From the NCBI RefSeq assembly GCF_006345805.1, contig NC_043022.1, positions 17,050,001-17,114,000 on the forward strand: a DNA stretch of 64,000 nt, given 5' to 3'. Positions within the stretch are counted from its first letter, which is position 1. Each line of letters starts with the position of its first letter. A program made the position numbers and the translations under genes. A model generated the notes under the pieces. It ran no database searches, was not told the origin of the DNA, and was given only the letters and a program-made list of their open reading frames with translations. The DNA is from Octopus sinensis. Its lineage: Eukaryota. Shown here one piece after another: positions 15,001 to 63,602 of this stretch.

Positions 15001-18000
15001 CGTAAATTTTGGGAAAATGGATTTATTTTTCAATGAAATTTTATGGAAATACCCTTCAAAAGGCATACATTACTATTATAAAGAAATTTGTGGGGGAAAT
15101 CTTTTCCAAAAGTGTAGGGCAAAGGGCTTCGAAAATTCAATAGATCCGACCTTTTCCCTCGTCAATTTTAGGAAAATGGATTTATTTTGCAAACAAATTT
15201 AATGGAAATACCTTTCAGATGGCATACATTACGATTATAAAGAAATTTATGGGGGAAACCTTTTCCAAAAGTGAAGGGCAAAGGGCTTCGAAAATTCAAA
15301 AGATCCGAGGTTTTCCCTCGTAAATTTTGGGAAAATGGATTTATTTTTCAATGAAATTTTATGGAAATACCCTTCAAAAGGCATACATTACTATTATAAA
15401 GAAATTTATGGGGGAAATCTTTTCCAAAGGGTGGGGGAAGGGCTTCGAAAATTCAATAGATCCGACCTTTTCCCTCATCAATTTTAGGAAATGGATTTAT
15501 TTTGCAATGAAATTTTATGGAAATACCTTTCAAATGGCATACATTATGATTATAAAGAAATTTGGGGGGGAAATCTTTCCAAAAGTGTAGGGCAAAGGGC
15601 TTCGAAAATTCAAAAGATCCGAACTTTTCCCTTGTAAATTTTAGGAAAATGGATTTATTTTTCAATGAAATTTTATGGAAATACCTTTCAAATGGCATAC
15701 ATTACGATTATAAAGAAATTTATGGGGGAAATCTTTTCCAAAAGTGTAGGGCAAAGGGCTTCGAAAATTCAAAAGATCCGAGGTTTTCCCTCGTAAATTT
15801 TAGGAAAATGGATTTATTTTTCAATGAAATTTTACGGAAATACCTTTCAAATGGCATACATTACGATTATAAAGAAATTTATGGGGGAAATCTTTTCCAA
15901 AGGGTGGGGGAAAGGGCTTCAAATTCAAAAGATCCGAGCTTTTCCCTCGTAAATTTTAGGAAAATGGATTTATTTTTCAATGAAATTTTATGGAAATACC
16001 CTTCAAAAGGCATACATTACTATTATAAAGAAATTTATGGGGGAAATCTTTTCCAAAAGGGTGGGGGAAAGGGCTTCGAAAATTCAATAGATCCGACCTT
16101 TTTCCCTCGTAAATTTTAGGAAAATGGATTTAATTTCAAAGAAATTTTATGGAAATACCTTTCAAATGGCATACATTACGATTATAAAGAAATTTGTGGG
16201 GAAATTTTCCAAAAGTGTAGGACAAAGGGCTTCGAAAATTCAATAGATCCGACCTTTTTCGCTCGTAAATTTTAGGAAAATGGATTTAATTTTCAATGAA
16301 ATTTTATGGAAATACCTTCAAAAGGCATACATTACTATTATAAAGAAATTTATGGGGGAAATCTTTTCCAAAAGGGTGGGGGAAAGGGCTTCGAAAATTC
16401 AATAGATCCGACCTTTTCCCTCATCAATTTAGGAAAATGGATTTAATTTTCAATGAAATTTTATGGAAATACCTTTCAAATGGCATACATTACGATTATA
16501 AAGAAAATTTGTGGGGGAAATCTTTTCCAAAAGTGTAAGGCAAACGGCTTCGAAAATTCAATAGATCCGACCTTTTTCCTCGTATCGTAAAATTTAAAAT
16601 GGATTTAATTTTCAATGAAATTTTATGGAAATACCTTTCAAATGGCATACATTACGATTATAAAGAAAATTTGGGGGAAATCTTTCCAAAAGTGTAGGGC
16701 AAAGGGCTTCGAAAATTCAATAGATCCGACCTTTTTCCCTCGTAAATTTTAGGAAAATGGATTTAATTTTCAATGAAATTTTATGGAAATACCTTTCAAA
16801 TGGCATACATTACGATTATAAAGAAATTTGTGGGGGAAATCTTTTCCAAAAGTGTAGGGCAGAGGGCTTCGAAAATTCAATAGATCCGACCTTTTTCCCT
16901 CGTAAATTTTAGGAAAATGGATTTAATTTTCAATGAAATTTTATGGAAATACCTTTCAAATGGCATACATTACGATTATAAAGAAATTTGTGGGGGAAAT
17001 CTTTTACAAAAGTGTAAGGCAAAGGGCTTCGAAAATTCAATAGATCCGACCTTTTTCCCTCGTAAATTTTAGGAAAATGGATTTATTTTTCAATGAAATT
17101 TTATGGAAATACCTTTCAAATGGCATACATTACGATTATAAAGAAATTTGTGGGGGAAATCTTTTCCAAAAGTGTAGGGCAAAGGGCTTCGAAAATTCAA
17201 TAGATCCGACCTTTTTCCCTCGTAAATTTTAGGAAAATGGATTTAATTTTCAATGAAATTTTATGGAAATACCTTTCAAATGGCATACATTACGATTATA
17301 AAGAAATTTGTGGGGGAAATCTTTTCCAAAAGTGTAAGGCAAAGGGCTTCGAAAATTCAATAGATCCGACCTTTTTCCCTCGTAAATTTTAGGAAAATGG
17401 ATTTATTTTTCAATGAAATTTTATGGAAATACCTTTCAAATGGCATACATTACGATTATAAAGAAATTTGTGGGGGAAATCTTTTCCAAAAGTGTAGGGC
17501 AAAGGGCTTCGAAAATTCAATAGATCCGACCATTTTCCCTCGTAAATTTTAGGAAAATGGATTTAATTTTCAATGAAATTTTATGGAAATACCTTTCAAA
17601 TGGCATACATTACGATTATAAAGAAATTTGTGGGGGAAATCTTTTCTAAAAGTGTAGGGCAAAGGGCTTCGAAAATTCAATAGATCCGACCTTTTTCCCT
17701 CGTAAATTTTAGGAAAATGGATTTAATTTTCAATGAAATTTTATGGAAATACCTTTCAAATGGCATACATTACGATTATAAAGAAATTTGTGGGGGAAAT
17801 CTTTTCCAAAAGTGTAGGGCAAAGGGCTTCAAAAATTCAATAGATCCGACCTTTTTCCCTCGTAAATTTTAGGAAAATGGATTTAATTTCAATGAAATTT
17901 TATGGAAATACCTTTCAAATGGCATACATTACGATTATAAAGAAATTTGTGGGGGAAATCTTTTCCAAAAGTGTAAGGCAAAGGGCTTCGAAAATTCAAT

Positions 18001-21000
18001 AGATCCGACCTTTTCCCTCATCAATTTTAGGAAAATGGATTTATTTTGTAATGAAATTTTATGGAAATACCTTTCAAATGGCATACATTATGATTATAAA
18101 GAAATTTGTGGGAGAAATCTTTCCAAAAGTGTAGGGCAAAGGGCTTCGAAAATTCAAAAGATCCAAACTTTTCCCTCGTAAATTTTAGGAAAATGGATTT
18201 AATTTTCAATGAAATTTTATGGAAATACCTTTCAAATGGCATACATTATGATTATAAAGAAATTTATGGGGGAAACCTTTTCCAAAAGTGTAGGGCAAAG
18301 GGCTTCGAAAATTCAAAAGATCCGAGGTTTTCCCTCGTAAATTTTAGGAAAATGGATTTATTTTCAATGAAATTTCATGGAAATACCCTTCAAAAGACAT
18401 ACATTACGATTATAAAGAAATGTATGGGGCAAATCTTTTCCAAAAGGGTGGGGGAAAGGGCTTCAAAAATTCAAAAGATCCGAGCTTTTCCCTCGTAAAT
18501 TTTAGGAAAATGGATTTAATTTTCAATGAAATTTTATGGAAATACCTTTCAAATGGCATACATTACGATTATAAAGAAATTTGTGGGGGAAATCTTTTCC
18601 AAAAGTGTAAGGCAAAGGGCTTCGAAAATTCAATAGATCCGACCTTTTTCCCTCGTAAATTTTAGGAAATGGATTTATTTTTCAATGAAATTTTATGGAA
18701 ATACCTTTCAAATGGCATACATTACGATTATAAAGAAATTTGTGGGGGAAATCTTTTCCAAAAGTGTAGGGCAAAGGGCTTCGAAAATTCAATAGATCCG
18801 ACCTTTTTCCCTCGTAAATTTTAGGAAAATGGATTTAATTTTCAATGAAATTTTATGGAAATACCTTTCAAATGGCATACATTACGATTATAAAGAAATT
18901 TGTGGGGGAAATCTTTTCTAAAAGTGTAGGGCAAAAGGCTTCGAAAATTCAATAGATCCGACCTTTTTCCCTCGTAAATTTTAGGAAAATGGATTTAATT
19001 TTCAATGAAATTTTATGGAAATACCTTTCAAATGGCATACATTACGATTATAAAGAAATTTGTGGGGGAAATCTTTTCCAAAAGTGTAGGGCAAAGGGCT
19101 TCGAAAATTCAATAGATCCGACCTTTTTCCCTCGTAAATTTTAGGAAAATGGATTTATTTTTCAATGAAATTTTATGGAAATACCTTTCAAATGGCATAC
19201 ATTACGATTATAAAGAAATTTGTGGGGGAATCTTTTCCAAAAGTGTAGGGCATAGGGCTTCGAAAATTCAATAGATCCGACCTTTTCCCTCGTAAATTTT
19301 AGGAAAATGGATTTAATTTTCAATGAAATTTTATGGAAATACCTTTCAAATGGCATACATTACGATTATAAAGAAATTTGTGGGGGAAATCTTTTCCAAA
19401 AGTGTAAGGCAAAGGGCTTCGAAAATTCAATAGATCCGACCTTTTTTCCTCGTAAATTTTAGGAAAATGGATTTATTTTTCAATGAAATTTTATGGAAAT
19501 ACCTTTCAAATGGCATACATTACGATTATAAAGAAATTGTGGGGGAAATCTTTTCCAAAAGTGTAGGGCAAAGGGCTTCGAAAATTCAATAGATCCGACC
19601 TTTTTCCCTCGTAAATTTTAGGAAAATGGATTTAATTTTCAATGAAATTTTATGGAAATACCTTTCAAATGGCATACATTACGATTATAAAGAAATTTGT
19701 GGGGGAAATCTTTTCCAAAAGTGTAAGGCAAAGGGCTTCGAAAATTCAATAGATCCGAACTTTTTCCCTCGTAAATTTTAGGAAAATGGATTTATTTTTC
19801 AATGAAATTTTATGGAAATACCTTTCAAATGGCATACATTACGATTATAAAGAAATTTGTGGGGGAAATCTTTTCCAGAAGTGTAAGGCAAAGGGCTTCG
19901 AAAATTCAATAGATCCGACCTTTTTCCCTCGTAAATTTTAGGAAAATGGATTTATTTTTCAATGAAATTTTATGGAAATACCTTTCAAATGGCATACATT
20001 ACGATTATAAAGAAATTTGTGGGGAAATCTTTTTCAAAAGTGTAGGGCAAAGGGCTTCGAAAATTCAATAGATCCGACCTTTTCCCTCGTCAATTTTAGG
20101 AAAATGGATTTATTTTGCAAACAAATTTTATGGAAATACCTTTCAGATGGCATACATTACGATTATAAGAAATTTATGGGGGAAACCTTTTCCAAAAGTG
20201 AAGGGCAAAGGGCTTCGAAAATTCAAAAGATCCGAGGTTTTCCCTCGTAAATTTTGGGAAAATGGATTTATTTTTCAATGAAATTTTATGGAAATACCCT
20301 TCAAAAGGCATACATTACTATTATAAAGAAATTTGGGGGGAAATCTTTTCCAAAAGTGTAGGGCAAAGGGCTTCGAAAATTCAATAGATCCGACCTTTTC
20401 CCTCGTCAATTTTAGGAAAATGGATTTATTTTGCAAACAAATTTTATGGAAATACCTTTCAGATGGCATACATTACGATTATAAAGAAATTTATGGGGGA
20501 AACCTTTTCCAAAAGTGAAGGGCAAAGGGCTTCGAAAATTCAAAAGATCCGAGGTTTTCCCTCGTAATTTTGGGAAAATGGATTTATTTTTCAATGAAAT
20601 TTTATGGAAATACCCTTCAAAAGGCATACATTACTATTATAAAGAAATTTATGGGGGAAATCTTTTCCAAAAGGGTGGGTGAAAGGGCTTCGAAAATTCA
20701 ATAGATCCGACCTTTTCCCTCATCAATTTTAGGAAAATGGATTTATTTTGCAATGAAATTTTATGGAAATACCTTTCAAATGGCATACATTATGATTATA
20801 AAGAAATTTGTGGGGGAAATCTTTTCCAAAAGTGTAGGGCAAAGGGCTTCGAAAATTCAAAAGATCCGACCTTTTTCCCTCGTAAATTTTAGGAAAATGG
20901 ATTTATTTTTCAATGAAATTTTATGGAAATACCTTTCAAATGGCATACATTACGATTATAAAGAAATTTATGGGGCAAATCTTTTCCAAAAGTGTAGGGC

Positions 21001-24000
21001 AAAGGGCTTCGAAAATTCAAAAGATCCGAACTTTTCCCTCGTAAATTTTAGGAAAATGGATTTATTTTCAATGAAATTTTACGGAAATACCTTTCAAATG
21101 GCATACATTACGATTATAAAGAAATTTATGGGGCAAATCTTTTCCAAAAGGGTGTAAAGGGCTTCGAAAATCCAAAAGATCCGACTTTTTCCCTCGTAAA
21201 TTTTAGGAAAATGGATTTATTTTGCAATGAAATTTTATGGAAATACCTTTCAAATGGCATACATTACGATTATAAAGAAATTGTGGGGGGAAATCTTTTC
21301 CAAAAGTGTAGGGCAAAGGGCTTCGAAAATTCAATAGATCCGACCTTTTCCCTCGTCAATTTTAGGAAAATGGATTTATTTTGCAAACAAATTTTATGGA
21401 AATACCTTTCAGATGGCATACATTACGATTATAAGAAATTTATGGGGGAAACCTTTTCCAAAAGTGAAGGGCAAGGGCTTCGAAAATTCAAAAGATCCGA
21501 GGTTTTCCCTCGTAAATTTTGGGAAAATGGATTTATTTTTCAATGAAATTTTATGGAAATACCCTTCAAAAGGCATACATTACTATTATAAAGAAATTTG
21601 TGGGGGAAATCTTTTCCAAAAGTGTAGGGCAAAGGGCTTCGAAAATTCAATAGATCCGACCTTTTCCCTCGTCAATTTTAGGAAAATGGATTTATTTTTC
21701 AAACAAATTTTATGGAAATACCTTTCAGATGGCATACATTACGATTATAAAGAAATTTATGGGGGAAACCTTTTCCAAAAGTGAAGGGCAAAGGGCTTCG
21801 AAAATTCAAAAGATCCGAGGTTTTCCCTCGTAAATTTTGGGAAAATGGATTTATTTTTCAATGAAATTTTATGGAAATACCCTTCAAAAGGCATACATTA
21901 CTATTATAAAGAAATTTATGGGGGAAATCTTTTCCAAAAGGTGGGGAAAGGGCTTCGAAAATTCAATAGATCCGACCTTTTCCCTCATCAATTTTAGGAA
22001 AATGGATTTATTTTGCAATGAAATTTTATGGAAATACCTTTCAAATGGCATACATTATGATTATAAAGAAATTTGTGGGGGAAATCTTTTCCAAAAGTGT
22101 AGGGCAAAGGGCTTCGAAAATTCAAAAGATCCGAACTTTTCCCTTGTAAATTTTAGGAAAATGGATTTATTTTTCAATGAAATTTTATGGAAATACCTTT
22201 CAAATGGCATACATTACGATTATAAAGAAATTTATGGGGCAAATCTTTTCCAAAAGTGTAGGGCAAAGGGCTTCGAAAATTCAAAAGATCCGAACTTTTC
22301 CCTCGTAAATTTTAGGAAAATGGATTTATTTTTCAATGAAATTTTACGGAAATACCTTTCAAATGGCATACATTACGATTATAAAGAAATTTATGGGGGA
22401 AATCTTTTCCAAAAGGGTGGGGGAAAGGGCTTCAAAAATTCAAAAGATCCGAGCTTTTCCCTCGTAAATTTTAGGAAAATGGATTTATTTTTCAATGAAA
22501 TTTTATGGAAATACCCTTCAAAAGGCATACATTACTATTATAAAGAAATTTGTGGGGGAAATCTTTTCCAAAAGGGTGGGGGAAAGGGCTTCGAAAATTC
22601 AATAGATCCGACCTTTTTCCCTCGTAAATTTTAGGAAAATGGATTTAATTTTCAAAGAAATTTTATGGAAATACCTTTCAAATGGCATACATTACGATTA
22701 TAAAGAAATTTGTGGGGGAAATCTTTTCCAAAAGTGTAGGACAAAGGGCTTCGAAAATTCAATAGATCCGACCTTTTTCGCTCGTAAATTTTAGGAAAAT
22801 GGATTTAATTTTCAATGAAATTTTATGGAAATACCCTTCAAAAGGCATACATTACTATTATAAAGAAATTTATGGGGGAAATCTTTTCCAAAAGGGTGGG
22901 GGAAAGGGCTTCGAAAATTCAATAGATCCGACCTTTTCCCTCATCAATTTTAGGAAAATGGATTTAATTTTCAATGAAATTTTATGGAAATACCTTTCAA
23001 ATGGCATACATTACGATTATAAAGAAATTTGTGGGGGAAATCTTTTCCAAAAGTGTAAGGCAAACGGCTTCGAAAATTCAATAGATCCGACCTTTTTCCC
23101 TCGTAAATTTTAGGAAAATGGATTTAATTTTCAATGAAATTTTATGGAAATACCTTTCAAATGGCATACATTACGATTATAAAGAAATTTGTGGGGAAAT
23201 CTTTTCCAAAAGTGTAGGCAAAGAGCTTCGAAAATTCAATAGATCCGACCTTTTTCCCTCGTAAATTTTAGGAAAATGGATTTAATTTTCAATGAAATTT
23301 TATGGAAATACCTTTCAAATGGCATACATTACGATTATAAAGAAATTTGTGGGGAAATCTTTTCCAAAAGTGTAGGGCAAAGGGCTTCGAAAATTCAATA
23401 GATCCGACCTTTTTCCCTCGTAAATTTTAGGAAAATGGATTTAATTTTCAATGAAATTTTATGGAAATACCTTTCAATGGCATACATTACGATTATAAAG
23501 AAATTTGTGGGGAAATCTTTTCCAAAAGTGTAGGGCAGAGGGCTTCGAAAATTCAATAGATCCGACCTTTTTCCCTCGTAAATTTTAGGAAAATGGATTT
23601 AATTTTCAATGAAATTTTATGGAAATACCTTTCAAATGGCATACATTACGATTATAAAGAAATTTGGGGGGAAATCTTTTACAAAAGTGTAAGGCAAAGG
23701 GCTTCGAAAATTCAATAGATCCGACCTTTTTCCCTCGTAAATTTTAGGAAAATGGATTTATTTTTCAATGAAATTTTATGGAAATACCTTTCAAATGGCA
23801 TACATTACGATTATAAAGAAATTTGTGGGGAAATCTTTTCCAAAAGTGTAGGGCAAAGGGCTTCGAAAATTCAATAGATCCGACCTTTTTCCCTCGTAAA
23901 TTTTAGGAAAATGGATTTAATTTTCAATGAAATTTTATGGAAATACCTTTCAAATGGCATACATTACGATTATAAAGAAATTTGTGGGGGAAATCTTTTC

Positions 24001-27000
24001 CAAAAGTGTAAGGCAAAGGCTTCGAAAATTCAATAGATCCGACCTTTTCCCTCGTAAATTTTAGGAAAATGATTTATTTTCAATGAAATTTTATGGAAAT
24101 ACCTTTCAAATGGCATACATTACGATTATAAAGAAATTTGTGGGGGAAATCTTTTCCAAAAGTGTAGGGCAAAGGGCTTCGAAAATTCAATAGATCCGAC
24201 CATTTTCCCTCGTAAATTTTAGGAAAATGGATTTATTTTCAATGAAATTTTATGGAAATACCTTTCAAATGGCATACATTACGATTATAAAGAAATTGTG
24301 GGGGGAAATCTTTTCCAAAAGTGTAGGGCAAAGGGCTTCGAAAATTCAATAGATCCGACCTTTTTCCCTCGTAAATTTAGGAAAATGGATTTAATTTTCA
24401 ATGAAATTTTATGGAAATACCTTTCAAATGGCATACATTACGATTATAAAGAAATTTGTGGGGAAATCTTTTCCAAAAGTGTAGGCAAAGGGCTTCGAAA
24501 ATTCAATAGATCCGACCTTTTCCCTCATCAATTTTAGGAAAATGGATTTATTTTGTAATGAAATTTTATGGAAATACCTTTCAAATGGCATACATTATGA
24601 TTATAAAGAAATTTGTGGGAGAAATCTTTTCCAAAAGTGTAGGGCAAAGGGCTTCGAAAATTCAAAAGATCCAAACTTTTCCCTCGTAAATTTTAGGAAA
24701 ATGGATTTAATTTTCAATGAAATTTTATGGAAATACCTTTCAAATGGCATACATTATGATTATAAAGAAATTTATGGGGGAAACCTTTTCCAAAAGTGTA
24801 GGGCAAAGGGCTTCGAAAATTCAAAAGATCCGAGGTTTTCCCTCGTAAATTTTAGGAAAATGGATTTATTTTTCAATGAAATTTCATGGAAATACCCTTC
24901 AAAAGACATACATTACGATTATAAAGAAATGTATGGGGCAAATCTTTTCCAAAAGGGTGGGGGAAAGGGCTTCAAAAATTCAAAAGATCCGAGCTTTTCC
25001 CTCGTAAATTTTAGGAAAATGGATTTAATTTTCAATGAAATTTTATGGAAATACCTTTCAAATGGCATACATTACGATTATAAAGAAATTTGTGGGGGAA
25101 ATCTTTTCCAAAAGTGTAAGGCAAGGGCTTCGAAAATTCAATAGATCCGACCTTTTCCCTCGTAAATTTTAGGAAAATGGATTTATTTTTCAATGAAATT
25201 TTATGGAAATACCTTTCAAATGGCATACATTACGATTATAAAGAAATTTGTGGGGAAATCTTTTCCAAAAGTGTAGGGCAAAGGGCTTCGAAAATTCAAT
25301 AGATCCGACCTTTTCCCTCGTAAATTTTAGGAAAATGGATTTAATTTTCAATGAAATTTTATGGAAATACCTTTCAAATGGCATACATTACGATTATAAA
25401 GAAATTTGTGGGGGAAATCTTTTCTAAAAGTGTAGGGCAAAGGGCTTCGAAAATTCAATAGATCCGACCTTTTTCCCTCGTAATTTTAGGAAAATGGATT
25501 TAATTTTCAATGAAATTTTATGGAAATACCTTTCAAATGGCATACATTACGATTATAAAGAAATTTGTGGGGAAATCTTTTCCAAAAGTGTAGGGCAAAG
25601 GGCTTCGAAAATTCAATAGATCCGACCTTTTTCCCTCGTAAATTTTAGGAAAATGGATTTAATTTTCAATGAAATTTTATGGAAATACCTTTCAAATGGC
25701 ATACATTACGATTCTAAAGAAATTTGTGGGGAAATCTTTTCCAAAAGTGTAGGGCAAAGGGCTTCGAAAATTCAATAGATCCGACCTTTTTCCCTCGTAA
25801 ATTTTAGGAAAATGGATTTAATTTTCAATGAAATTTTATGGAAATACCTTTCAAATGGCATACATTACGATTATAAAAATTTGTGGGGGAAATCTTTTCC
25901 AAAAGTGTAAGGCAAAGGGCTTCGAAAATTCAATAGATCCGACCTTTTTCCCTCGTAAATTTTAGGAAAATGGATTTATTTTTCAATGAAATTTTATGGA
26001 AATACCTTTCAAATGGCATACATTACGATTATAAAGAAATTTGTGGGGGAAATCTTTTCCAGAAGTGTAAGGCAAAGGGCTTCGAAAATTCAATAGATCC
26101 GACCTTTTCCCTCGTAAATTTTAGGAAAATGGATTTATTTTCAATGAAATTTTATGGAAATACCTTTCAAATGGCATACATTACGATTATAAAGAAATTT
26201 GTGGGGGAAATCTTTTCCAAAAGTGTAGGGCAAAGGGCTTCGAAAATTCAATAGATCCGACCTTTTTCCCTCGTAAATTTTAGGAAAATGGATTTAATTT
26301 TCAATGAAATTTTATGGAAATACCTTTCAAATGGCATACATTACGATTATAAAGAAATTTGTGGGGGAAATCTTTTCCAAAAGTGTAAGGCAAAGGGCTT
26401 CGAAAATTCAATAGATCCGACCTTTTCCCTCATCAATTTTAGGAAAATGGATTTATTTTGTAATGAAATTTTATGGAAATACCTTTCAAATGGCATACAT
26501 TATGATTATAAAGAAATTTGTGGGAGAAATCTTTTCCAAAAGTGTAGGGCAAAGGGCTTCGAAAATTCAAAAGATCCAAACTTTTCCCTCGTAAATTTTA
26601 GGAAAATGGATTTAATTTTCAATGAAATTTTATGGAAATACCTTTCAAATGGCATACATTATGATTATAAAGAAATTTATGGGGGAACCTTTTCCAAAAG
26701 TGTAGGGCAAGGGCTTCGAAAATTCAAAAGATCCGAGGTTTTCCCTCGTAAATTTTAGGAAAATGGATTTATTTTTCAATGAAATTTCATGGAAATACCC
26801 TTCAAAAGACATACATTACGATTATAAAGAAATGTGGGGCAAATCTTTTCCAAAAGGGTGGGGAAAGGGCTTCAAAAATTCAAAAGATCCGAGCTTTTCC
26901 CTCGTAAATTTTAGGAAAATGGATTTAATTTTCAATGAAATTTTATGGAAATACCTTTCAAATGGCATACATTACGATTATAAAGAAATTTGTGGGGGAA

Positions 27001-30000
27001 ATCTTTTCCAAAAGTGTAAGGCAAAGGGCTTCGAAAATTCAATAGATCCGACCTTTTTCCCTCGTAAATTTTAGGAAAATGGATTTATTTTTCAATGAAA
27101 TTTTATGGAAATACCTTTCAAATGGCATACATTACGATTATAAAGAAATTTGTGGGGGAAATCTTTTCCAAAAGTGTAGGGCAAAGGGCTTCGAAAATTC
27201 AATAGATCCGACCTTTTTCCCTCGTAAATTTTAGGAAAATGGATTTAATTTTCAATGAAATTTTATGGAAATACCTTTCAAATGGCATACATTACGATTA
27301 TAAAGAAATTTGTGGGGAAATCTTTTCTAAAAGTGTAGGCAAAGGGCTTCGAAAATTCAATAGATCCGACCTTTTTCCCTCGTAAATTTTAGGAAAATGG
27401 ATTTAATTTTCAATGAAATTTTATGGAAATACCTTTCAAATGGCATACATTACGATTATAAAGAAATTTGTGGGGGAATCTTTTCCAAAAGTGTAGGGCA
27501 AAGGGCTTCGAAAATTCAATAGATCCGACCTTTTTCCCTCGTAAATTTTAGGAAAATGGATTTAATTTTCAATGAAATTTTATGGAAATACCTTTCAAAT
27601 GGCATACATTACGATTCTAAAGAAATTTGTGGGGGAAATCTTTTCCAAAAGTGTAGGGCAAAGGGCTTCGAAAATTCAATAGATCCGACCTTTTCCCTCG
27701 TAAATTTTAGGAAAATGGATTTAATTTTCAATGAAATTTTATGGAAATACCTTTCAAATGGCATACATTACGATTATAAAGAAATTTGTGGGGGAAATCT
27801 TTTCCAAAAGTGTAAGGCAAAGGGCTTCGAAAATTCAATAGATCCGACCTTTTTCCCTCGTAAATTTTAGGAAAATGGATTTATTTTTCAATGAAATTTT
27901 ATGGAAATACCTTTCAAATGGCATACATTACGATTATAAAGAAATTTGTGGGGGAAATCTTTTCCAGAAGTGTAGGCAAAGGGCTTCGAAAATTCAATAG
28001 ATCCGACCTTTTTCCCTCGTAAATTTTAGGAAAATGGATTTATTTTTCAATGAAATTTTATGGAAATACCTTTCAAATGGCATACATTACGATTATAAAG
28101 AAATTTGTGGGGGAAATCTTTTCCAAAAGTGTAGGCAAAGGGCTTCGAAAATTCAATAGATCCGACCTTTTTCCCTCGTAAATTTTAGGAAAATGGATTT
28201 AATTTTCAATGAAATTTTATGGAAATACCTTTCAAATGGCATACATTACGATTATAAAGAAATTTGTGGGGGAAATCTTTTCCAAAAGTGTAGGCAAAGG
28301 GCTTCGAAAATTCAATAGATCCGACCTTTTTCCCTCGTAAATTTTAGGAAAATGGATTTATTTTTCAATGAAATTTTATGGAAATACCTTTCAAATGGCA
28401 TACATTACGATTATAAAGAAATTTGTGGGGGAAATCTTTTCCAAAAGTGTAGGGCAAAGGGCTTCGAAAATTCAATAGATCCGACCTTTTTCCCTCGTAA
28501 ATTTTAGGAAAATGGATTTAATTTTCAATGAAATTTTATGGAAATACCTTTCAAATGGCATACAGTACGATTATAAAGAAATTTGTGGGGGAAATCTTTT
28601 CCAAAAGTGTAGGGCAAAGGGCTTCGAAAATTCAATAGATCCGACCTTTTTCCCTCGTAAATTTTAGGAAAATGGATTTAATTTTCAATGAAATTTTATG
28701 GAAATACCTTTCAAATGGCATACATTACGATTATAAAGAAATTTGTGGGGGAAATCTTTTCCAAAAGTGTAAGGCAAAGGGCTTCGAAAATTCAATAGAT
28801 CCGACCTTTTTCCCTCGTAAATTTTAGGAAAATGGATTTAATTTTCAATGAAATTTTATGGAAATACCTTTCAAATGGCATACAGTACGATTATAAAGAA
28901 ATTTGTGGGGGAAATCTTTTCCAAAAGTGTAGGGCAAAGGGCTTCGAAAATTCAATAGATCCGACCTTTTTCCCTCGTAAATTTTAGGAAAATGGATTTA
29001 ATTTTCAATGAAATTTTGGAAATACCTTTCAAATGGCATACATTACGATTATAAAGAAATTTGTGGGGGAAATCTTTTCCAAAAGGGTAAGGCAAAGGGC
29101 TTCGAAAATTCAATAGATCCACCTTTTCCCTCGTAAATTTTAGGAAAATGGATTTAATTTTCAATGAAATTTTATGGAAATACCTTTCAAATGGCATACA
29201 TTACGATTATAAAGAAATTTGTGGGGGAAATCTTTTCCAAAAGTGTAGGGCAAAGGGCTTCGAAAATTCAATAGATCCGCCTTTTTCCCTCGTAAATTTT
29301 AGGAAAAGGAAATGGATTATTTTTCAATGAATTTTATGGAAATACCTTTCAAATGGCATACATTACGATTATAAAGAAATTTGTGGGGGGGAAATCTTTT
29401 CCAGAAGTGTAAGGCAAAGGGCTTCGAAAATTCAATAGATCCGACCTTTTTCCCTCGTAAATTTTAGGAAAATGGATTTATTTTTCAATGAAATTTTATG
29501 GAAATACCTTTCAAATGGCATACATTACGATTATAAAGAAATTTGTGGGGGAAATCTTTTCCAAAAGTGTAGGGCAAAGGGCTTCGAAAATTCAATAGAT
29601 CCGACCTTTTTCCCTCGTAAATTTTAGGAAAATGGATTTAATTTTCAATGAATTTTATGGAAATACCTTTCAAATGGCATACATTACGATATAAGAAATT
29701 TGTGGGGGAAATCTTTTCCAAAAGTGTAAGGCAAAGGGCTTCGAAAATTCAATAGATCCGACCTTTTTCCCTCGTAAATTTTAGGAAAATGGATTTATTT
29801 TTCAATGAATTTTATGGAAATACCTTTCAAATGGCATACATTACGATTATAAAGAAATTTGTGGGGGAAATCTTTTCCAAAAGTGTAGGGCAAAGGGCTT
29901 CGAAAATTCAATAGATCCGACCTTTTTCCTCGTAAATTTTAGGAAAATGGATTTAATTTTCAATGAAATTTTATGGAAATACCTTTCAAATGGCATACAG

Positions 30001-31789
30001 TACGATTATAAAGAAATTGTGGGGGAAATCTTTTCCAAAAGTGTAGGGCAAAGGGCTTCGAAAATTCAATAGATCCGACCTTTTTCCCTCGAATTTTAGG
30101 AAAATGGATTTAATTTTCAATGAAATTTTATGGAAATACCTTTCAAATGGCATACATTACGATTATAAAGAAATTTGTGGGGGAAATTTTCCAAAAGTGT
30201 AAGGCAAAGGGCTTCGAAAATTCAATAGATCCGACCTTTTTCCCTCGTAAATTTTAGGAAAATGGATTTAATTTTCAATGAAATTTTATGGAAATACCTT
30301 TCAAATGGCATACAGTACGATTATAAAGAAATTGTGGGGGAAATCTTTTCCAAAAGTGTAGGGCAAAGGGCTTCGAAAATTCAATAGATCCGACCTTTTC
30401 CCTCGTAAATTTTAGGAAAATGGATTTAATTTTCAATGAAATTTTATGGAAATACCTTTCAAATGGCATACATTACGATTATAAAGAAATTTGTGGGGGA
30501 AATCTTTTCCAAAAGTGTAAGGCAAAGGGCTTCGAAAATTCAATAGATCCGACTTTTTCCCTCGTAAATTTTAGGAAAATGGATTTAATTTTCAATGAAA
30601 TTTTATGGAAATACCTTTCAAATGGCATACATTACGATTATAAAGAAATTTGTGGGGGAAATCTTTTCCAAAAGTGTAGGGCAAAGGGCTTCGAAAATTC
30701 AAAAGATCCGACCTTTTTCCCTCGTAAATTTTAGGAAAATGGATTTAATTTTCAATGAAATTTTATGGAAATACCTTTCAAATGGCATACATTACGATTA
30801 TAAAGAAATTGTGGGGGGGAAATCTTTTCTAAAAGTGTAGGGCAAAGGGCTTCGAAAATTCAATAGATCCGACTTTTCCCTCGTAAATTTTAGGAAAATG
30901 GATTTAATTTTCAATGAAATTTTATGGAATACCTTTCAAATGGCATACATTACGATTATAAAGAAATTTGTGGGGGAAATCTTTTCCAAAAGTGTAGGCA
31001 AAGGGCTTCGAAAATTCAAAATCCGACCTTTTTCCCTCGTAAATTTTAGGAAAATGGATTTAATTTTCAATGAAATTTTATGGAAATACCTTTCAAATGG
31101 CATACATTACGATTATAAAGAAATTTGTGGGGGAAATCTTTTCCAAACGTGTAGGGCAAAGGGCTTCGAAAATTCAATAGATCCGACCTTTTTCCCTTGT
31201 AAATTTTAGGAAAATGGATTTAATTTTCAATGAAATTTTATGGAAATACCTTTCAAATGGCATACATTATGATTATAAAGAAATTTATGGGGGAAATCTT
31301 TTCCAAAAGGGTGGGGGAAAGGGCTTCGAAAATTCAAAAGATCCAAGGTTTTCCCTTGTAAATTTTAGGAAAATGGATTTAATTTTCAATGAAATTTTAT
31401 GGAAATACCTTTCAAATGGCATACATTATGATTATAAAGAAATTTGTGGGGGAAATCTTTTCCAAAAGTGTAGGGCAAAGGGCTTCGAAAATTCAAAAGA
31501 TCCAAGGTTTTCCCTTGTAAATTTTAGGAAAATGGATTTAATTTTCAATGAAATTTTATGGAAATACCCTTCAAATGGCATACATTACGATTATGAAGAA
31601 ATTTATGGGGGAAATCTTTTCCAAAAGGGTGGGGGAAAGGGCTTCGAAAATTCAAAAGATCCAAGCCGTTCCCTCGTAAATTTTAGGAAAATGGATTTAT
31701 TTTTCAATGAAATTTCATGGAAATACCCTTCAAAAGGCATACATTACGATTATAAAGAAATTTATGGGGCAAATCTTTTCCAAAAGTGT
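1..31789. repeat. Tandem satellite array, 158-160-bp monomer, ~200 copies, head-to-tail, truncated by the left window edge
   Basis: Monomer consensus ~GAAAATTCAA(A/T)AGATCCGA(CC/GG/AC)TTTTCCCTCGTAAATTTTAGGAAAATGGATTTATTTTTCAATGAAATTTTATGGAAATACCTTTCAAATGGCATACATTACGATTATAAAGAAATTT(A/G)TGGGGGAAATCTTTTCCAAAAG(TGTA/GGTG)GGG(C/G)AAAGGGCTTC. CGTAAATTTT recurs at 16741, 16901, 17061, 17221, 17381, 17541, 17701, 17861 (160-bp period). The 53-aa repeating ORFs show 159-bp units. The array stops abruptly at ...CCAAAAGTGT 31789. Confidence 0.99.
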
Positions 31790-32271
31790 GCTGAAATGAC
31801 TATGGGTATTGATTTTATAAATTCGTTCTATTGGCATAATGCTGTATATGTGTAATATTCCGATATCCTTTGAGTAAAATCCAAAAGTCCAACAGAGTTT
31901 AATATGAGTCCATCCCAAAGTAAAGTTTACAAGCAATCTAAGATCCCATAAATGTTGTTCGTTCCCTTTAGGGAATTTATATAGAATGTTGCAGATTCGA
32001 GGTTTGTGTTGAAATACATTCATATACATATATATATATATACATACACGTTTCCGAAGAATTAAACGCATTAAAATATTATCTTTTACATACCTGCTAA
32101 AATTACTGGATATCTTGATCCCAGGGCATCAATTGTTTCCACTTACCTTTAGAAATTTTTCGCTCTGAAAATTTAAGCGGCCGACAAATTAGTCTACGCT
32201 TTCGTGTGGAGAGAGAGTGAAGGGGAGAGAGAGAGAAAGATAGAGAGGTGAGAGAGGGGGAAAGAGTGAGA

Positions 32272-32470
32272 GAAGGGGAGGGAAGGTTTGAGCGAGACAG
32301 AGAAGGGGAGGGAGGAATTGAGCGAGAGATAGAAGGGGAGGGAGGGATTGAGCGAGAGAGAGAGAAGGGGAGGGAGGAATTGAGCGAGAGATAGAAGGGG
32401 AGGGAGGAATTGAGCGAGAGAGAGAGAAGGGAGGGAGGAATTGAGCGAGAGAGAGAGAGAGAGAGAGAGA
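32272..32470. repeat. GA-rich minisatellite, ~30-32-bp unit (AGAAGGGGAGGGAGGAATTGAGCGAGAGAT), ~6 copies, within a wider GA tract
   Basis: Direct reading of tandem units. Confidence 0.9.
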
Positions 32471-33369
32471 AGGGGGGAGGGATGGGGCAAAGTTGTGTTT
32501 TGTTATTTTATGTACTTTTTTTTTTCGCCTGTACAAAATTAATTTTGAAATGCAGGGTTTTTTCGCAGATTCGGAATCTCCGCCGTCGGTATAGTGTTCA
32601 TGTAAAAATAAAACAAAAAAAATATCCATGATCTTTACCCCCCCCCCCCCCCGATTTATATCTATGCATAAGGGGGCACGTAGATAAACTAGACGAAGCC
32701 CCGTTTTGGAAGTATGTTAAAGTTTTTAGTAGACGTATGACGGAGAATTATTCAACATCGTGTTTGCTTCTATGAGGATCTCTAACCTTTAAAGCGAAAA
32801 AACACAAGACCCACGTATACCCCGGGTATGTATAACATGCTGTTTCACTTCTATTTCAGCAGTTCATTTTCTGTGAGCTGTAGAGACTGTTGCGCTCGCG
32901 CGCCCTTCATTGCTGGGTAGGGAAGGGGTACGTGGATCAATTTTGGAGTTTATCAGGGTACATATGTTCCTCATGCATTCCAAAACCGAGTTGTCGATTT
33001 TCACGTATGGGGTGTCAAAAGATTCAGTACTATTTCCACTACTAACTAAACTTTATTTTCATTGACATATTTGAATTACAATAATTTAAAATTATAATCT
33101 TTTCCCTAAGTTATCAACCGTAAACATTTCATACAATGACCATGATAACCTCACGTTTTCTATATGAGTGTCTGCCTCAAAAGACATCCATCATCACCTT
33201 CACTCACTCTATTTCTCTCTCCCTTTCTCTTTCACACACATGCGCGCACAGACTCACAAAATCCTAATCTTGCTCTGACGTCATGGCTCCACGCAACTGT
33301 TGCAATATCACTCTTTATGGAGGAGTTCTCCGTTTCCACGCTCAAACTAATTTTGCCATTACATATTTC

Positions 33370-33580
33370 ATGGAACACGGTGTCCTGCTGTTTACCCACA
33401 ATTGGTGTGCTTCCATCCCCATAACTTAGTAGTTTGGCAAAAAAAGACCGATAGAATAAGTTACAGGCTTAAAAGAAAACTAATTACTGGAATCGATTCA
33501 TTCAACTAAAAATTCTTCGAGGAATTGCTCCAGCGTGGCCGCAGTCAACTGACTGAAACAAGTAAAAGAGTAAAAAAATG
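33370..33580 (+). mobile_element. 3' part of an abundant tRNA-derived SINE family
   Basis: ...CCCATAACTTAGTAGTTTGGCAAAA..GACCGATAGAATAAG...CCAGCGTGGCCGCAGTCAACTGACTGAAACAAGTAAAAGAG; the same tail recurs at 44.8, 49.1, 49.4, 54.9 and 63.9 kb. Confidence 0.8.
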
Positions 33581-33604
33581 AAAAGATATTTTTGTTTTTG
33601 AAAC

Positions 33605-33671: not shown

Positions 33672-55148
<21,477 letters not shown>

Positions 55149-59474: not shown

Positions 59475-59945
59475 ACTCAACGAGTCGCAGTATATTTCGT
59501 TAATAATGAGTCAATAACAAGTTAATGAGTCGCTGTATATTTCTTAATAACGAGTCACTGAGCTGCTATACATTTTTAGTAATGTATCAATGAGTCGCTA
59601 TATATTTCTTGACAATGAGTCAATGAGTCGCTATATATTTCTTGACAATGAGTCACTATATATTTCTTGACAATGAGTCAATGAGTCGCTATATATTTCT
59701 TGACAATGAGTCGCTATATATTTCTTGACAATGAGTCAATGAGTCGCTATATATTTCTTGACAATGAGTCAATGAGTCGCTATATATTTCTTGACAATGA
59801 GTCAATGAGTCGCTATATATTTCTTGACAATGAGTCAATGAGGCGCTGTATATTAATAACGAGTCACTGAAACTGTATCTTTCTTAACAACGAGCCAATG
59901 AGACGCTGTATATTTCTTAATAACGAGTCAATGACTCACTGTATA
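59475..59945. repeat. 25/33-bp minisatellite (AATGAGTC)1-2 GCTATATATTTCTTGAC
   Basis: Near-perfect core at 59589-59840 with degenerate flanking units. Confidence 0.93.
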
Positions 59946-60183
59946 TTTCATAATCGACTTTGACTCCCGCCATTCAACGCGGCCATTTGACTCGTGGTAT
60001 TTCACAACTTGTTACAACATTCCACAGTTACCGACACAATGTATCTGAGGTGTTTAAACATGGCAACATCTTCAACCTCTCCCACAATCCTACGCATCAT
60101 CTAGTTTAACACCTCAGATCTCAGAAATAGGGGTTATCCCACCCACCCCTTTATTTTAATCCCAACACATATCGAGAAGAATC

Positions 60184-61185: not shown

Positions 61186-61645
61186 GAAGTATATTTGCCA
61201 CCTAAATGTGGTTAACCCTTAAGGGTCGATGCTACTGTAGCTTGTAGCTCCAGGAAGACATCTCCTCCTGCTGGCCATTGACACACTATCTGTGTCCTAT
61301 GAATATTTGCAAAGGGAAGTGATCGTTCCCATCCGCAGCCTGACGTGATACACATGGACCTGAGTTTCTGAGTATTGACCCTTCATCAGCGTGTGACAAC
61401 CACCGGTTGGCGATGGGAAGTGGTTCTCAATATATATATATACTTTTCCTGGTGACGAAAAGTCACTGATCTCGAAAAAAGTGAAAACAAGCAATAATAA
61501 ATCTCTGAGCGAGGTATAAACAGTAGCTGCACGACATTGTGAAGTATATTTGTCCCTTAAATGTAGCTAACCCTTAAGGGCCGATGCTACTGTAGCGTGT
61601 AACCCCCAGGAAGACATCTCCTCCAGCTGGCGATTGACAGCTATA
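61183..61645 (+). repeat. Two diverged ~110-bp direct repeats (TGAAGTATATTTG...AACCCTTAAGGG.CGATGCTACTGTAGC...CAGGAAGACATCTCCTCC)
   Basis: Copies at ~61183-61290 and ~61538-61645. Confidence 0.75.
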
Positions 61646-61666
61646 TGGATATGGGAAATCCACAGC

Positions 61667-61815
61667 CTACGTTCTGAGTTCAAATTCCGCCGAGGTCGAC
61701 TTTGCTTTTCATCCTTTCGGGGTCGATAAAAAAAGTACCAGTTTCGCACTTAATCCCTTTGTCTGTCCTTGTTTGTCCCCTCTATGTTTAGCCCCTTGTG
61801 GGCAGTAAAGAAATA
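61667..61815 (+). mobile_element. 5'-truncated, internally deleted tRNA-derived SINE
   Basis: CTACGTTCTGAGTTCAAATTCCGCCGAGGTCGAC...TTTAGCCCCTTGTGGGCAGTAAAGAAATA. Confidence 0.85.
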
Positions 61816-61879
61816 TATAACATGGTTCGTTATCAAATGTATACCCCCTCGCCACCCCCACTTTTTTTCTGAACCAAAA

Positions 61880-62604
61880 TAAGGGATTTGCAGCATATTA
61901 GGAGGTCAGGATACTTGATTCCACGCAAAAAATCCGAGGTTTTTTTTTTTCTTAGTGAAACTCGTGCGGGTGTTAATATAAAAATTTACCCTTTTTTTTT
62001 AATGAAATTTCCTAGAAATACCTCTCAGAGTGTGTGGATTACGACATCGAAATTTGATATGAAAAGCATAATGGTGAGCACACATCCATACGTATTGACA
62101 CAAGATTTTTTTCTCTCGAGATTTTAAGCTTCATTTTGTGTATATAGGTGATATATCATTATGAATGAATGCCAGCTAAGCAATTTTCATTTTTTTTTTT
62201 TAATATTGAATTTCGATATAGTCGTAATTAAAACACACTGGAAGTATTTATAGGAAATTTCATTAAAAAATACCAATTTTTCTGGCAGTTATGAAAAAGC
62301 AGAGGCGACTCGTGTGAATTTTCCGAAACGCCTCTCACCACCCTCGGAATAGATACCTTTCAGTGAGTTTTAATTACGATTATATCAAATTTACATCATT
62401 TGAAGGGTATTTGTAGAAAGTTTCATGAAAAAATATCCATTTCTCTGGAAATTATGAAGAACCAAAATGGGGCTGGGATGGCACATTCGTCTCCTACAGA
62501 TGTAGGAGACGAACACTACTCCTCCACATGATCGGCTTGAAAAATTGTTAAGATATTGAGATATTTAACTATTTTTCTCTACATGAAACCAATGGTAGCC
62601 TTAA
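61880..62604. mobile_element. Putative non-autonomous DNA transposon (Kolobok-like TTAA end) with internal repeats homologous to the satellite monomer; left end unresolved
   Basis: Right end ...GGTAGCC|TTAA (62601-62604); perfect 13-bp hairpin at 62486-62513; satellite-like segments in both orientations at ~61925-62055, 62205-62290 and 62352-62460. Confidence 0.5.

Positions 62605-63221: not shown

Positions 63222-63602
<381 letters not shown>

What the first reader, a model, noticed from the sequence alone, without database searches (positions are those of the whole stretch)
61880..62604. The satellite monomer is homologous to internal repeats of a dispersed transposon-like element 30 kb away: a possible birth record of the satellite
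The reverse complement of ~62380-62460 (TCATAATTTCCAGAGAAATGGATATTTTTTCATGAAACTTTCTACAAATACCCTTCAAATGATGTAAATTTGATATAA) aligns colinearly with the monomer (TCGTAAATTTTAGGAAAATGGATTTATTTTTCAATGAAATTTTATGGAAATACCCTTCAAATGGCATACATTACGATTATAA), roughly 70% by eye, with an exact 16-mer AAATACCCTTCAAATG. Forward segments also match: 62352-62392 (ATACCTTTCAG...TTACGATTATA) and 61925-62055 (AAAAATCCGAGGTTTT...AATGAAATT...GAAATACCTCTCAGA...TTACGA). A further reverse copy lies at ~62205-62290. The element has a 13-bp hairpin and a GG/TTAA end. Established: satellites can arise from tandem amplification of transposon-internal repeats. Inference: this array derives from the subterminal repeats of a Kolobok-like or other non-autonomous DNA element, so a transposase-derived DNA-binding protein (as with CENP-B/pogo) might recognise the monomer.
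Basis: partly seen in the sequence, partly recalled or inferred. Interest (0 to 1): 0.8.

Follow-up and report, generated by a model that had tools for sequence, protein, structure and literature searches.

The report
Octopus satellite born from Merlin transposon repeats
The 159-bp satellite in this window is an over-grown copy of a repeat that normally sits, one to eight times, inside the inverted ends of a Merlin-type DNA transposon; this is a clear new example of a known way satellites arise, and the best evidence lies right next to the array, not 30 kb away.

Summary
Window 62209-62457 (minus strand) aligns to 1.55 satellite monomers (E 7e-19; score 57 against 13.6±1.8 for shuffles).

The interpretation needs correcting in three ways.

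1. **What the 62-kb element is.** It is a 5'-truncated copy (61995-~62511) of an old, ~733-bp, almost fully palindromic MITE ('type I'). Each arm carries 1.6 units of a 159-bp repeat. Its target-site duplication (TSD) is 8 bp, not TTAA, so it is not Kolobok-like.

2. **A closer relative exists.** A younger family ('type II') has units about 84% identical to the satellite, against about 68% for type I. Its arms start 5'-GG, have perfect 8-bp TSDs and hold 1.9 to ~23 units. Transposase-bearing copies encode a DDE_Tnp_IS1595 (Merlin) transposase.

3. **The array abuts a Merlin remnant.** The array is ~34.5 kb (~217 units) and its variant is private to this one locus. Window 32062-33403 holds Merlin internal DNA and 44 codons of the transposase N-terminus, in the same order and orientation as in intact copies.

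The array is therefore most likely an in-situ expansion of a Merlin arm repeat. The 62-kb MITE is a distant cousin, not the parent. This is a new member of a known kind (compare Tetris/TIR-220).

The parts
1..31789 (+). 159-bp tandem array. It continues 2,763 bp upstream of the window to C26:17047237, for a total of ~34.5 kb and ~217 units. Units are 82-99% identical (mostly 90-99%) to the array consensus and ~85-87% to the type II transposon unit.
   Evidence: A diagnostic 40-mer matches 118 times genome-wide; all 100 places listed, including every match with <=2 mismatches, lie in this array.
32062..32250 (+). Merlin internal segment. In other copies it is present as an inverted duplicate on both sides of the transposase gene.
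   Evidence: 65-86% identity to L061 2573-2769 / 6348-6554, L073, L075, L076 and L083.
32461..32547 (+). Short further piece of Merlin internal DNA.
   Evidence: 75% identity to L075 and L083.
32660..33403 (+). Merlin 5' internal region, running into the start of the transposase gene. It is broken off at 33403.
   Evidence: 85% over 725 bp to L074; 81-88% to L070, L076 and L061 5006-5186.
33271..33402 (+). 44 codons of the Merlin transposase N-terminus (remnant).
   Evidence: tblastn: 66% identity, E 7.5e-15 to the L074 ORF. That ORF overlaps, and shares its sequence with, the L073 ORF, which carries DDE_Tnp_IS1595 at 48 bits.
33398..33600 (-). Ubiquitous SINE-like repeat that ends the Merlin remnant.
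   Evidence: It matches the flanks of many unrelated loci and about seven other places in the window.
61844..62000 (+). Terminal unit of a different, younger repeat family ('family C'). It abuts and replaces the left arm of the type I element.
   Evidence: 87-94% identity to 13 loci. Not significantly similar to the satellite.
61995..62065 (+). Remnant of the left arm of the type I MITE, equivalent to monomer positions 148-159 plus 1-56.
   Evidence: consensus positions 226-~296.
62066..62208 (.). Central part of the type I MITE, itself partly palindromic.
62209..62457 (-). Right arm of the type I MITE: 1.55 units of the 159-bp repeat.
62458..62511 (-). Right terminal, non-satellite part of the type I MITE. 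In this copy it is distorted by a 24-nt near-palindrome at 62488-62511.

Best explanation
**What it is.** The 159-bp unit is a subterminal tandem repeat carried inside the long terminal inverted repeats of a Merlin-superfamily DNA transposon lineage in this Octopus genome. Three forms coexist:
- **Transposase-bearing copies of about 5.4-6.6 kb.** Layout: terminus, then 0.5-23 units, then internal DNA with an IS1595-type DDE transposase, then units, then terminus.
- **Younger non-autonomous derivatives ('type II').** Each arm has a ~120-bp unique terminus and then 1.9-7.8 units.
- **An old 733-bp, almost fully palindromic MITE family ('type I').** Each arm has 1.6 units. The element at window 61995-62511 is a truncated copy of this form.

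**How the array arose.** Unit number changes locally within individual copies. By inference this happens through unequal exchange, replication slippage, or repair of transposase-induced breaks. In one copy on contig C26, the 5'-side arm array grew to ~217 units (34.5 kb) and was homogenised into a locus-private variant. That is the window's 'satellite'. The copy has since lost its outer terminus and most of its transposase gene.

**Shown:** the homology, the family anatomy, the TSDs, the transposase domain, the adjacency and colinearity, the private variant and the polarity of changes.

**Inferred:** the expansion mechanism, and the idea that the units serve as transposase-binding sites.
For: **Homology is far above chance.**

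**Type I anatomy.**
- All 12+ aligned type I copies carry the units with identical boundaries, inside a defined element.
- Termini are GGCATACCTACAC....
- The 8-bp flanks match at 98 of 184 positions, against 51.6±6.4 in permutations; no permutation of 20,000 reached the observed value.

**Type II anatomy.**
- Arms always start their units at monomer position 83, after a conserved terminus GGTTAATGTTTACATC....
- Unit numbers vary: 1.9, 2.7, 3.3, 4.3 and 7.8 within aligned copies, with arrays of ~12 and ~23 units beside copies on C25 and C3.
- Four perfect 8-bp TSDs were found: AAACACTT, ATGAATTG, AAATATTT and CAGAGTTT.

**Transposase link.**
- ORFs between the arms hit PF12762 DDE_Tnp_IS1595 at 30.4 and 48 bits, against a cut-off of 27.
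- The closest relatives of this transposase (61-85% amino-acid identity) lie beside unit arrays at six further loci, seven including L061 itself.
- The C11 copy (5,365 bp) has both type II termini, a perfect TSD and the transposase inside.

**Adjacency in the window.** The order array(+), then internal segment, then transposase N-terminus(+) matches L061 and the C7 copy.

**Polarity of change.**
- In a unit tree, satellite units form one derived clade (SH-aLRT 99, stem length 0.11) within a comb of type II units. Type I forms the other side (support 100).
- With type I as outgroup, the satellite consensus has 19 private changes and the type II consensus has 5.
- At up to 2 mismatches, the satellite-specific 40-mer occurs nowhere else in the 2.72-Gb assembly.

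**Literature.** Merlin families with internal tandem repeats have been proposed as proto-satellite carriers (PMC8101967).
Against: - **Left edge.** The array's left edge (monomer position ~70) is not preceded by the expected ~120-bp transposon terminus (score 11 against 10.3±1.4 for shuffles). Another repeat sits there instead.
- **Right junction.** The 270 bp between the array's right edge and the first recognisable Merlin segment match no other copy. The array ends at position ~81, not at the 128-130 or 75-77 seen in other copies. In-situ origin therefore rests on adjacency and colinearity on one side only.
- **Tree support.** Nesting of the satellite clade inside type II has only moderate support (87), from 160 columns.
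- **Search limits.** The genome search scores only the best candidates and skips very common words, so copy numbers are not exact. The assembly may also have collapsed or omitted other arrays.
- **Type I link.** No transposase has been tied directly to type I. Its assignment to Merlin rests on the 8-bp TSD, the GG termini and the shared units.
Confidence: 0.78

Rival explanations
1. The satellite came first. A pre-existing 159-bp satellite was captured, more than once, by DNA transposons, which then spread monomer fragments around the genome.
For: - Capture of satellite DNA by transposons is known in general (my own knowledge).
- The array's left side has no transposon terminus.
- The array is far larger than any transposon-borne run of units.
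Against: - Units sit at fixed positions with fixed phase in two families, one of which is old: copies are only 73-87% identical to their consensus.
- The satellite variant is private to one locus and is the derived state: 19 private changes against 5; one long-stemmed clade.
- No independent array of a more ancestral variant was found away from Merlin DNA among the loci examined.
Confidence: 0.08
2. The type I element at 62 kb, or its family, is the direct parent of the array, and the 30-kb proximity records the birth.
For: - The homology is real.
- The element lies on the same contig, 30 kb away.
Against: - The type I unit consensus is 68% identical to the satellite, against 84% for type II.
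- Type I units form a separate clade with support 100.
- Type I copies are scattered over all chromosomes (thousands of first-look candidates), so one lying within 30 kb is unremarkable.
- A Merlin remnant of the closer lineage abuts the array.
Confidence: 0.04
3. The array derives from the Merlin lineage but did not grow in the neighbouring copy. For example, it expanded from a type II MITE, or arrived by segmental duplication, and the Merlin remnant is a chance or later neighbour.
For: - The outer terminus is missing and the junction sequences are not conserved.
- Type II termini are numerous: 2,159 first-look candidates.
Against: - Transposase-bearing copies of this lineage are few; only about 8 close relatives were found.
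- Even so, one lies within 0.3-1.6 kb of the array, on the correct side and in the correct orientation and order.
Confidence: 0.1

Closest known systems
Tetris foldback transposon and its TIR-220 repeats in Drosophila virilis (Dias et al. 2014, PMC4079207)
   Same: - A non-autonomous, foldback-like DNA transposon whose inverted arms contain tandem repeats of a few hundred bp.
- Repeat number varies between copies.
- The same repeats also form kb-scale satellite-like arrays that arose inside the element.
   Different: - Here the transposase-bearing partner is identified (Merlin / IS1595-type). Tetris's partner was unknown.
- The unit is 159 bp rather than 220 bp, and the host is a cephalopod.
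- The large array here is a single 34.5-kb locus with a private variant, not a multi-locus heterochromatic satellite.
Merlin families with internal tandem repeats, such as Symbiodinium Sy.k_F2 with 3-4 units of 163 bp (Lopes et al. 2021, PMC8101967)
   Same: - Same superfamily hallmarks: DDE_Tnp_IS1595, 8-bp TSD, termini starting 5'-GG.
- Internal tandem repeats of about 160 bp with copy-number differences between copies.
- The authors proposed such repeats as proto-satellites.
   Different: - That paper documents only a few units per element and gives no expanded array.
- Here the series runs from 1.6 to ~217 units.
- Here the repeats lie symmetrically in both inverted arms.
Bivalve MITE-like elements with satellite-like core repeats, such as pearl (Gaffney et al. 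2003, cited in PMC12628747); from my own knowledge, also CvA and DTC84
   Same: Mollusc genomes in which tandem-repeat units are shared between dispersed mobile elements and satellite arrays.
   Different: - In those elements the repeats form a central core between unlike flanks, and they have been linked to Helitrons (my own knowledge).
- Here the repeats are in the inverted arms of a cut-and-paste Merlin element.
CENP-B / pogo
   Same: Only the general idea that a transposase-related protein may bind a motif in a satellite monomer.
   Different: - No domesticated gene, no conserved box and no centromeric location are shown here.
- The array is at one locus on one chromosome.

Membership tests
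Merlin superfamily (type II and transposase-bearing copies) | Transposase with a DDE_Tnp_IS1595 (ISXO2-like) domain | tested here: met
   PF12762 at 30.4 bits (L061 ORF) and at 48 bits (L073 ORF); cut-off 27. The best database relatives are all ISXO2-like proteins, the top one 98% identical to an Octopus vulgaris protein.
Merlin superfamily (type II and transposase-bearing copies) | 8- or 9-bp target-site duplication (PMC8101967) | tested here: met
   Four perfect 8-bp TSDs: L064 AAACACTT, L066 ATGAATTG, L063 AAATATTT and the C11 5.4-kb copy CAGAGTTT.
Merlin superfamily (type II and transposase-bearing copies) | Terminal inverted repeats beginning 5'-GG (PMC8101967) | tested here: met
   The consensus terminus is GGTTAATGTTTACATCTTGACCC on both ends.
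Merlin superfamily (type II and transposase-bearing copies) | TIR length 24-462 bp, as originally described | tested here: inconclusive
   Arms are about 280 bp to more than 1.3 kb once the unit arrays are counted. The unique terminal part is ~120 bp. The published range is descriptive, not a strict criterion.
Merlin superfamily (type I MITE, the element at 61995-62511) | 8-bp TSD and 5'-GG termini | tested here: met
   Flank matching peaks at 8 bp (51% against ~26-40% at other lengths). 98 of 184 positions match, against 51.6±6.4 in permutations, p<5e-5. The consensus ends are GGCATACC... / ...GGTATACC. The window's own copy lacks its left end, so its TSD cannot be read.
Merlin superfamily (type I MITE) | Mobilised by a Merlin transposase (termini shared with an autonomous element) | tested here: inconclusive
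   Type I shares the 159-bp subterminal units with type II (72-76% over ~260 bp, E down to 1e-48). Its outermost ~30 bp are not clearly alignable with the type II terminus, and no transposase-bearing element with type I termini was looked for or found.
   TSDs are 8 bp and of varied sequence. The TTAA strings near 62548 and 62604 lie outside the element as bounded by the family consensus.
Satellite DNA in the strict sense (a genome-wide tandem family) | Long, homogeneous head-to-tail array | tested here: met
   About 217 units over 34.5 kb, 93% matches.
Satellite DNA in the strict sense (a genome-wide tandem family) | Present as arrays at several chromosomal sites or as a major genome fraction | tested here: not met
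   The variant-specific 40-mer is confined to C26:17.048-17.078 Mb. Other arrays (C3 3.7 kb, C25 1.9 kb and others) are separate, 75-87% identical expansions, and several lie beside Merlin copies. Assembly collapse cannot be excluded.
Transposon-arm-derived satellite (Tetris/TIR-220 type) | The same repeat is found (i) in tandem inside transposon arms with variable number and (ii) as long arrays that start inside an element | tested here: met
   The outer boundary of the window's array is not preserved.
CENP-B-like domesticated transposase binding the monomer | A conserved host gene whose product binds a box in the monomer | not testable with these tools
   No binding or expression data are available. 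The blocks conserved across all three unit types (for example GAAATTTT and GAAAATTCA) are short and AT-rich.

The most novel reading that the evidence does not exclude
The 159-bp units are the subterminal binding sites of the Merlin transposase. Under this reading the 34.5-kb array has a function: either a chromosome-specific transposase sink or heterochromatin/small-RNA nucleation site that restrains the family, or a centromere-associated repeat of contig C26. Array growth itself would be driven by repeated transposase-induced breaks in the arm rather than by passive unequal exchange.
Probability: 0.08. Interest if true: 0.75.

Novelty: new member of a known kind. Interest (0 to 1): 0.4.

Why it matters
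It is an unusually complete case of a satellite arising from a transposon. One genome holds the transposase-bearing Merlin element, two generations of non-autonomous derivatives, and a graded series of unit numbers (1.6, 1.9, 2.7, 3.3, 4.3, 7.8, ~12, ~23, ~217). The largest array still lies next to the remains of its parent copy.

It gives substance to the suggestion that Merlin elements spread proto-satellites (PMC8101967), and does so in cephalopods, whose satellites are barely described. In the library searched, the one detailed octopus repeat annotation read (O. vulgaris, PMC13282606) lists Merlin but never mentions satellite DNA.

In practice, it tells annotators that this 'satellite' and several thousand dispersed hits belong to one Merlin-derived repeat system. 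The principle itself is established, so it does not change how the field thinks.

Tried and rejected
- **Chance similarity.** Rejected by dinucleotide shuffles.
- **Orphan monomers inserted in an unrelated element.** Rejected: every aligned family member has them in the same place.
- **Kolobok / TTAA.** Rejected by TSD analysis.
- **The 61925-61990 stretch as a further forward match.** Rejected at chance level. It is 'family C'.
- **Transposon terminus at the array's left edge.** I located the edge by sampling 200-bp pieces upstream, but found no terminus there. Another repeat flanks it.
- **Rest of the Merlin copy elsewhere in the window (second arm, remainder of the transposase).** None found.
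- **Higher-order repeat structure.** Only weak signals at lags of 2 and 14-15 units.
- **Gradient of transposon-like units toward the array edges.** None, apart from the outermost partial unit, which keeps the transposon-type 'ATTCACAAGATCC'.
- **Bulk download of seven Merlin loci.** Smaller pieces were used instead.
- **Related species.** The genome tools hold no other cephalopod, so the orthologous locus could not be examined.

Full report
**Setting.** The window is G000:C26:17050001-17114000 of a 2.72-Gb, 13,516-contig eukaryotic assembly. The closest database protein to a transposase found during this work is 98% identical to an Octopus vulgaris protein. The genome is therefore an Octopus of the vulgaris complex; from memory, the assembly statistics fit O. 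sinensis. Window 1-31789 is a 159-bp tandem array of 200.5 copies with 93% matches.

- Against a monomer trimer, the minus strand of 62209-62457 aligns over 257 columns (1.55 units) at 64.6% identity, E 7e-19.
- 61992-62056 aligns on the plus strand at 73.5%, E 2e-6.
- Local alignment scores are 57 and 28. For 300 dinucleotide-preserving shuffles of 61880-62604 the mean is 13.6±1.8 and the maximum is 21.
- The stated ends (61880, 62604, 'GG/TTAA') are not the element's ends.

**What the 62-kb element is.**
- A whole-genome search with 61880-62604 showed that the interval is two things. Bases 61844-62000 belong to a young family (87-94% identical copies; 'family C'). Bases 61995-62485 belong to a dispersed family whose copies are ~70% identical to it.
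- Twelve full copies aligned with flanks give a 733-bp consensus that is almost entirely a palindrome; the two arms match each other over ~330 bp.
- Each arm has a ~35-bp terminus (GGCATACCTACACAAGTGTGCCCC...) that is not in the satellite. It is followed by ~255 bp colinear with monomer positions ~120-159, 1-159 and 1-55. That is 1.6 units of a repeat whose period in the consensus is exactly 159 bp.
- The boundaries are the same in every copy, so these are not stray monomers.
- Flank comparison over 23 copies peaks at 8 bp. 98 of 184 positions match, against 51.6±6.4 when flanks are re-paired; none of 20,000 permutations reached this.
- The window's copy matches consensus positions 226-717 at 78%. 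It has lost its left 225 bp to the family C unit, and its right end is distorted by a 24-nt near-palindrome at 62488-62511.
- I call this family type I.

**A closer relative, and the autonomous partner.**
- Searching the genome with a monomer dimer found units 75-87% identical on many chromosomes, often as inverted pairs of short arrays.
- These 'type II' elements have a conserved ~120-bp unique terminus (GGTTAATGTTTACATCTTGACCC...). Their units always start at monomer position 83, and unit number varies: 1.9, 2.7, 3.3, 4.3 and 7.8.
- Three well-preserved non-autonomous copies have perfect 8-bp TSDs.
- Type II termini are 89-97% identical to their consensus. This family is therefore much younger than type I, whose copies are 73-87% identical to consensus.
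- One inverted pair lies 5.4 kb apart (L061). An ORF between its arms hits Pfam DDE_Tnp_IS1595 above the curated cut-off.
- The closest genomic relatives of that ORF (61-85% amino-acid identity) lie next to unit arrays at six further loci: C3:69.22 Mb (beside ~23 units), C10:24.79 Mb, C10:30.11 Mb, C11:49.43 Mb, C7:63.33 Mb, C25:14.40 Mb (beside ~12 units) and C3:43.65 Mb. The C3:43.65 Mb match is only two short fragments.
- A longer ORF from one of these loci scores 48 bits on the same domain.
- The C11 copy is decisive. It spans 5,365 bp, has type II termini on both sides and the transposase gene inside, and is flanked by a perfect 8-bp duplication, CAGAGTTT.
- A DDE_Tnp_IS1595 transposase, an 8-bp TSD and 5'-GG termini are the defining features of the Merlin superfamily as summarised in PMC8101967. 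The TTAA duplication that defines Kolobok is not met.

**The array's own neighbourhood.**
- Immediately right of the array, window 32062-32250, 32461-32547 and 32660-33403 match internal DNA of the Merlin copies at 65-88%.
- Window 33271-33402 encodes 44 residues of the transposase N-terminus (66% identity, E 7.5e-15).
- The order and orientation are array(+), internal segment, then transposase start(+). This is the same as in L061 and in the C7 copy.
- The copy is cut at 33403 by a ubiquitous SINE-like repeat. No further transposase and no second arm were found in the window.
- Sampling upstream placed the array's left edge at C26:17047237, giving a total of ~34.5 kb and ~217 units.
- That edge falls at monomer position ~70. 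It is preceded not by the transposon terminus but by another repeat.
- The outermost partial unit keeps the transposon-type 'ATTCACAAGATCC'.

**Direction of descent.**
- Unit consensus identities are: satellite to type II 84%, satellite to type I 68%, type II to type I 76%.
- With type I as outgroup, the satellite consensus carries 19 private changes and type II carries 5.
- In a maximum-likelihood tree of 72 units, type I is one clade (support 100). All satellite units form one clade on a long stem (support 99, length 0.11) within an unresolved comb of type II units (support 87). Units of one element tend to cluster together, which indicates local gain and homogenisation.
- A 40-mer diagnostic for the satellite variant, with up to 3 mismatches, occurs 118 times in the genome. 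All 100 places listed, including every match with up to 2 mismatches, lie within this one array.
- Taken together, the unit was in the transposon lineage before types I and II diverged. The window's array is a late, single-locus, homogenised derivative.

**Mechanism.**
- Shown: a Merlin lineage carries a 159-bp tandem repeat in both inverted arms. The number of units differs between copies and even between the two arms of one copy (4.3 against 3.3 in L061; 2.7 against 7.8 in L062). Arrays of 12, 23 and ~217 units sit beside transposase-bearing copies.
- Inferred: growth is by unequal exchange, slippage or break repair within the arm, followed by homogenisation. The window's copy later lost its outer terminus and most of its gene.
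- Speculative: the units are transposase-binding sites. Subterminal repeats often play this role in cut-and-paste elements (my own knowledge). Only short AT-rich blocks are invariant across the three unit types.

**Comparison with what is known.**
- The closest described system is Tetris and its TIR-220 repeats in Drosophila virilis (PMC4079207).
- Merlin families with a few internal ~160-bp repeats have been described and proposed as proto-satellite carriers (PMC8101967).
- The one detailed octopus repeat annotation read (O. vulgaris) lists Merlin families but never mentions satellite DNA (PMC13282606). My searches found no paper on this 159-bp array.
- This is therefore a new member of a known kind. 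It is well documented and instructive, but not a new principle.

**Verdict.** It is Merlin with 8-bp TSDs rather than Kolobok with TTAA. The 62-kb copy is a distant cousin, and the real 'birth record' is the Merlin remnant at 32.06-33.40 kb.

Noticed in passing
window 61844-62000; loci L011, L013-L017, L021-L025, L027, L029: 'Family C' is a young repeat: its terminal ~155-bp unit is 87-94% identical between loci. Units occur in tandem-like clusters in both orientations. C-like pieces (70-87%) also lie just downstream of the transposase gene in five Merlin copies, so it may be another derivative of the same Merlin lineage.
   Followed up: partly
G000:C11:49425449-49430813 (L101, L102, L075): This is a 5,365-bp transposase-bearing Merlin copy with a perfect 8-bp TSD. 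The inner end of both arms carries an inverted copy of the terminus motif (CAAGATGTAGGGGTTAATGTTTAGG), which might be an additional binding site.
   Followed up: partly
G000:C14:58359200-58362279: A ~3-kb array of a unit variant spaced at 131 bp, 75-77% identical to the satellite. It appears to be a separate expansion of a deleted unit.
   Followed up: no
G000:C3:69216709-69220448 and C25:14403162-14405067: Intermediate arrays of ~23 and ~12 units, each beside a Merlin transposase remnant. They look like independent expansions of the same arm repeat.
   Followed up: partly
window 32208-32470: A GA-rich 30-bp minisatellite lies inside the Merlin remnant. A similar GA-rich tract sits in L061 at 6938-7166.
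   Followed up: no
window 63237-63480: A near-perfect foldback with arms of ~110 bp, flanked by long (TA)n tracts. It looks like another small palindromic mobile element.
   Followed up: no
window 42067-42970 and 59520-59949: A 25-bp minisatellite (~36 copies, strongly G-skewed) and a 33-bp minisatellite (~14 copies).
   Followed up: no
L100 1632-2040 (C26:17046832-17047240): The DNA flanking the array's left edge is itself a repeat with an inverted internal structure. It is 85-90% identical to a copy in the flank of L036.
   Followed up: partly
window 61540-61840, 33398-33600 and many other places: Two abundant SINE-like repeats, one of them tRNA-derived in appearance, pepper the window. One of them ends the Merlin remnant at 33403.
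   Followed up: no
window 62353-62392: Inside the right arm of the type I copy, a ~40-bp piece is duplicated in inverted orientation. It forms a local hairpin with 62397-62412.
   Followed up: partly
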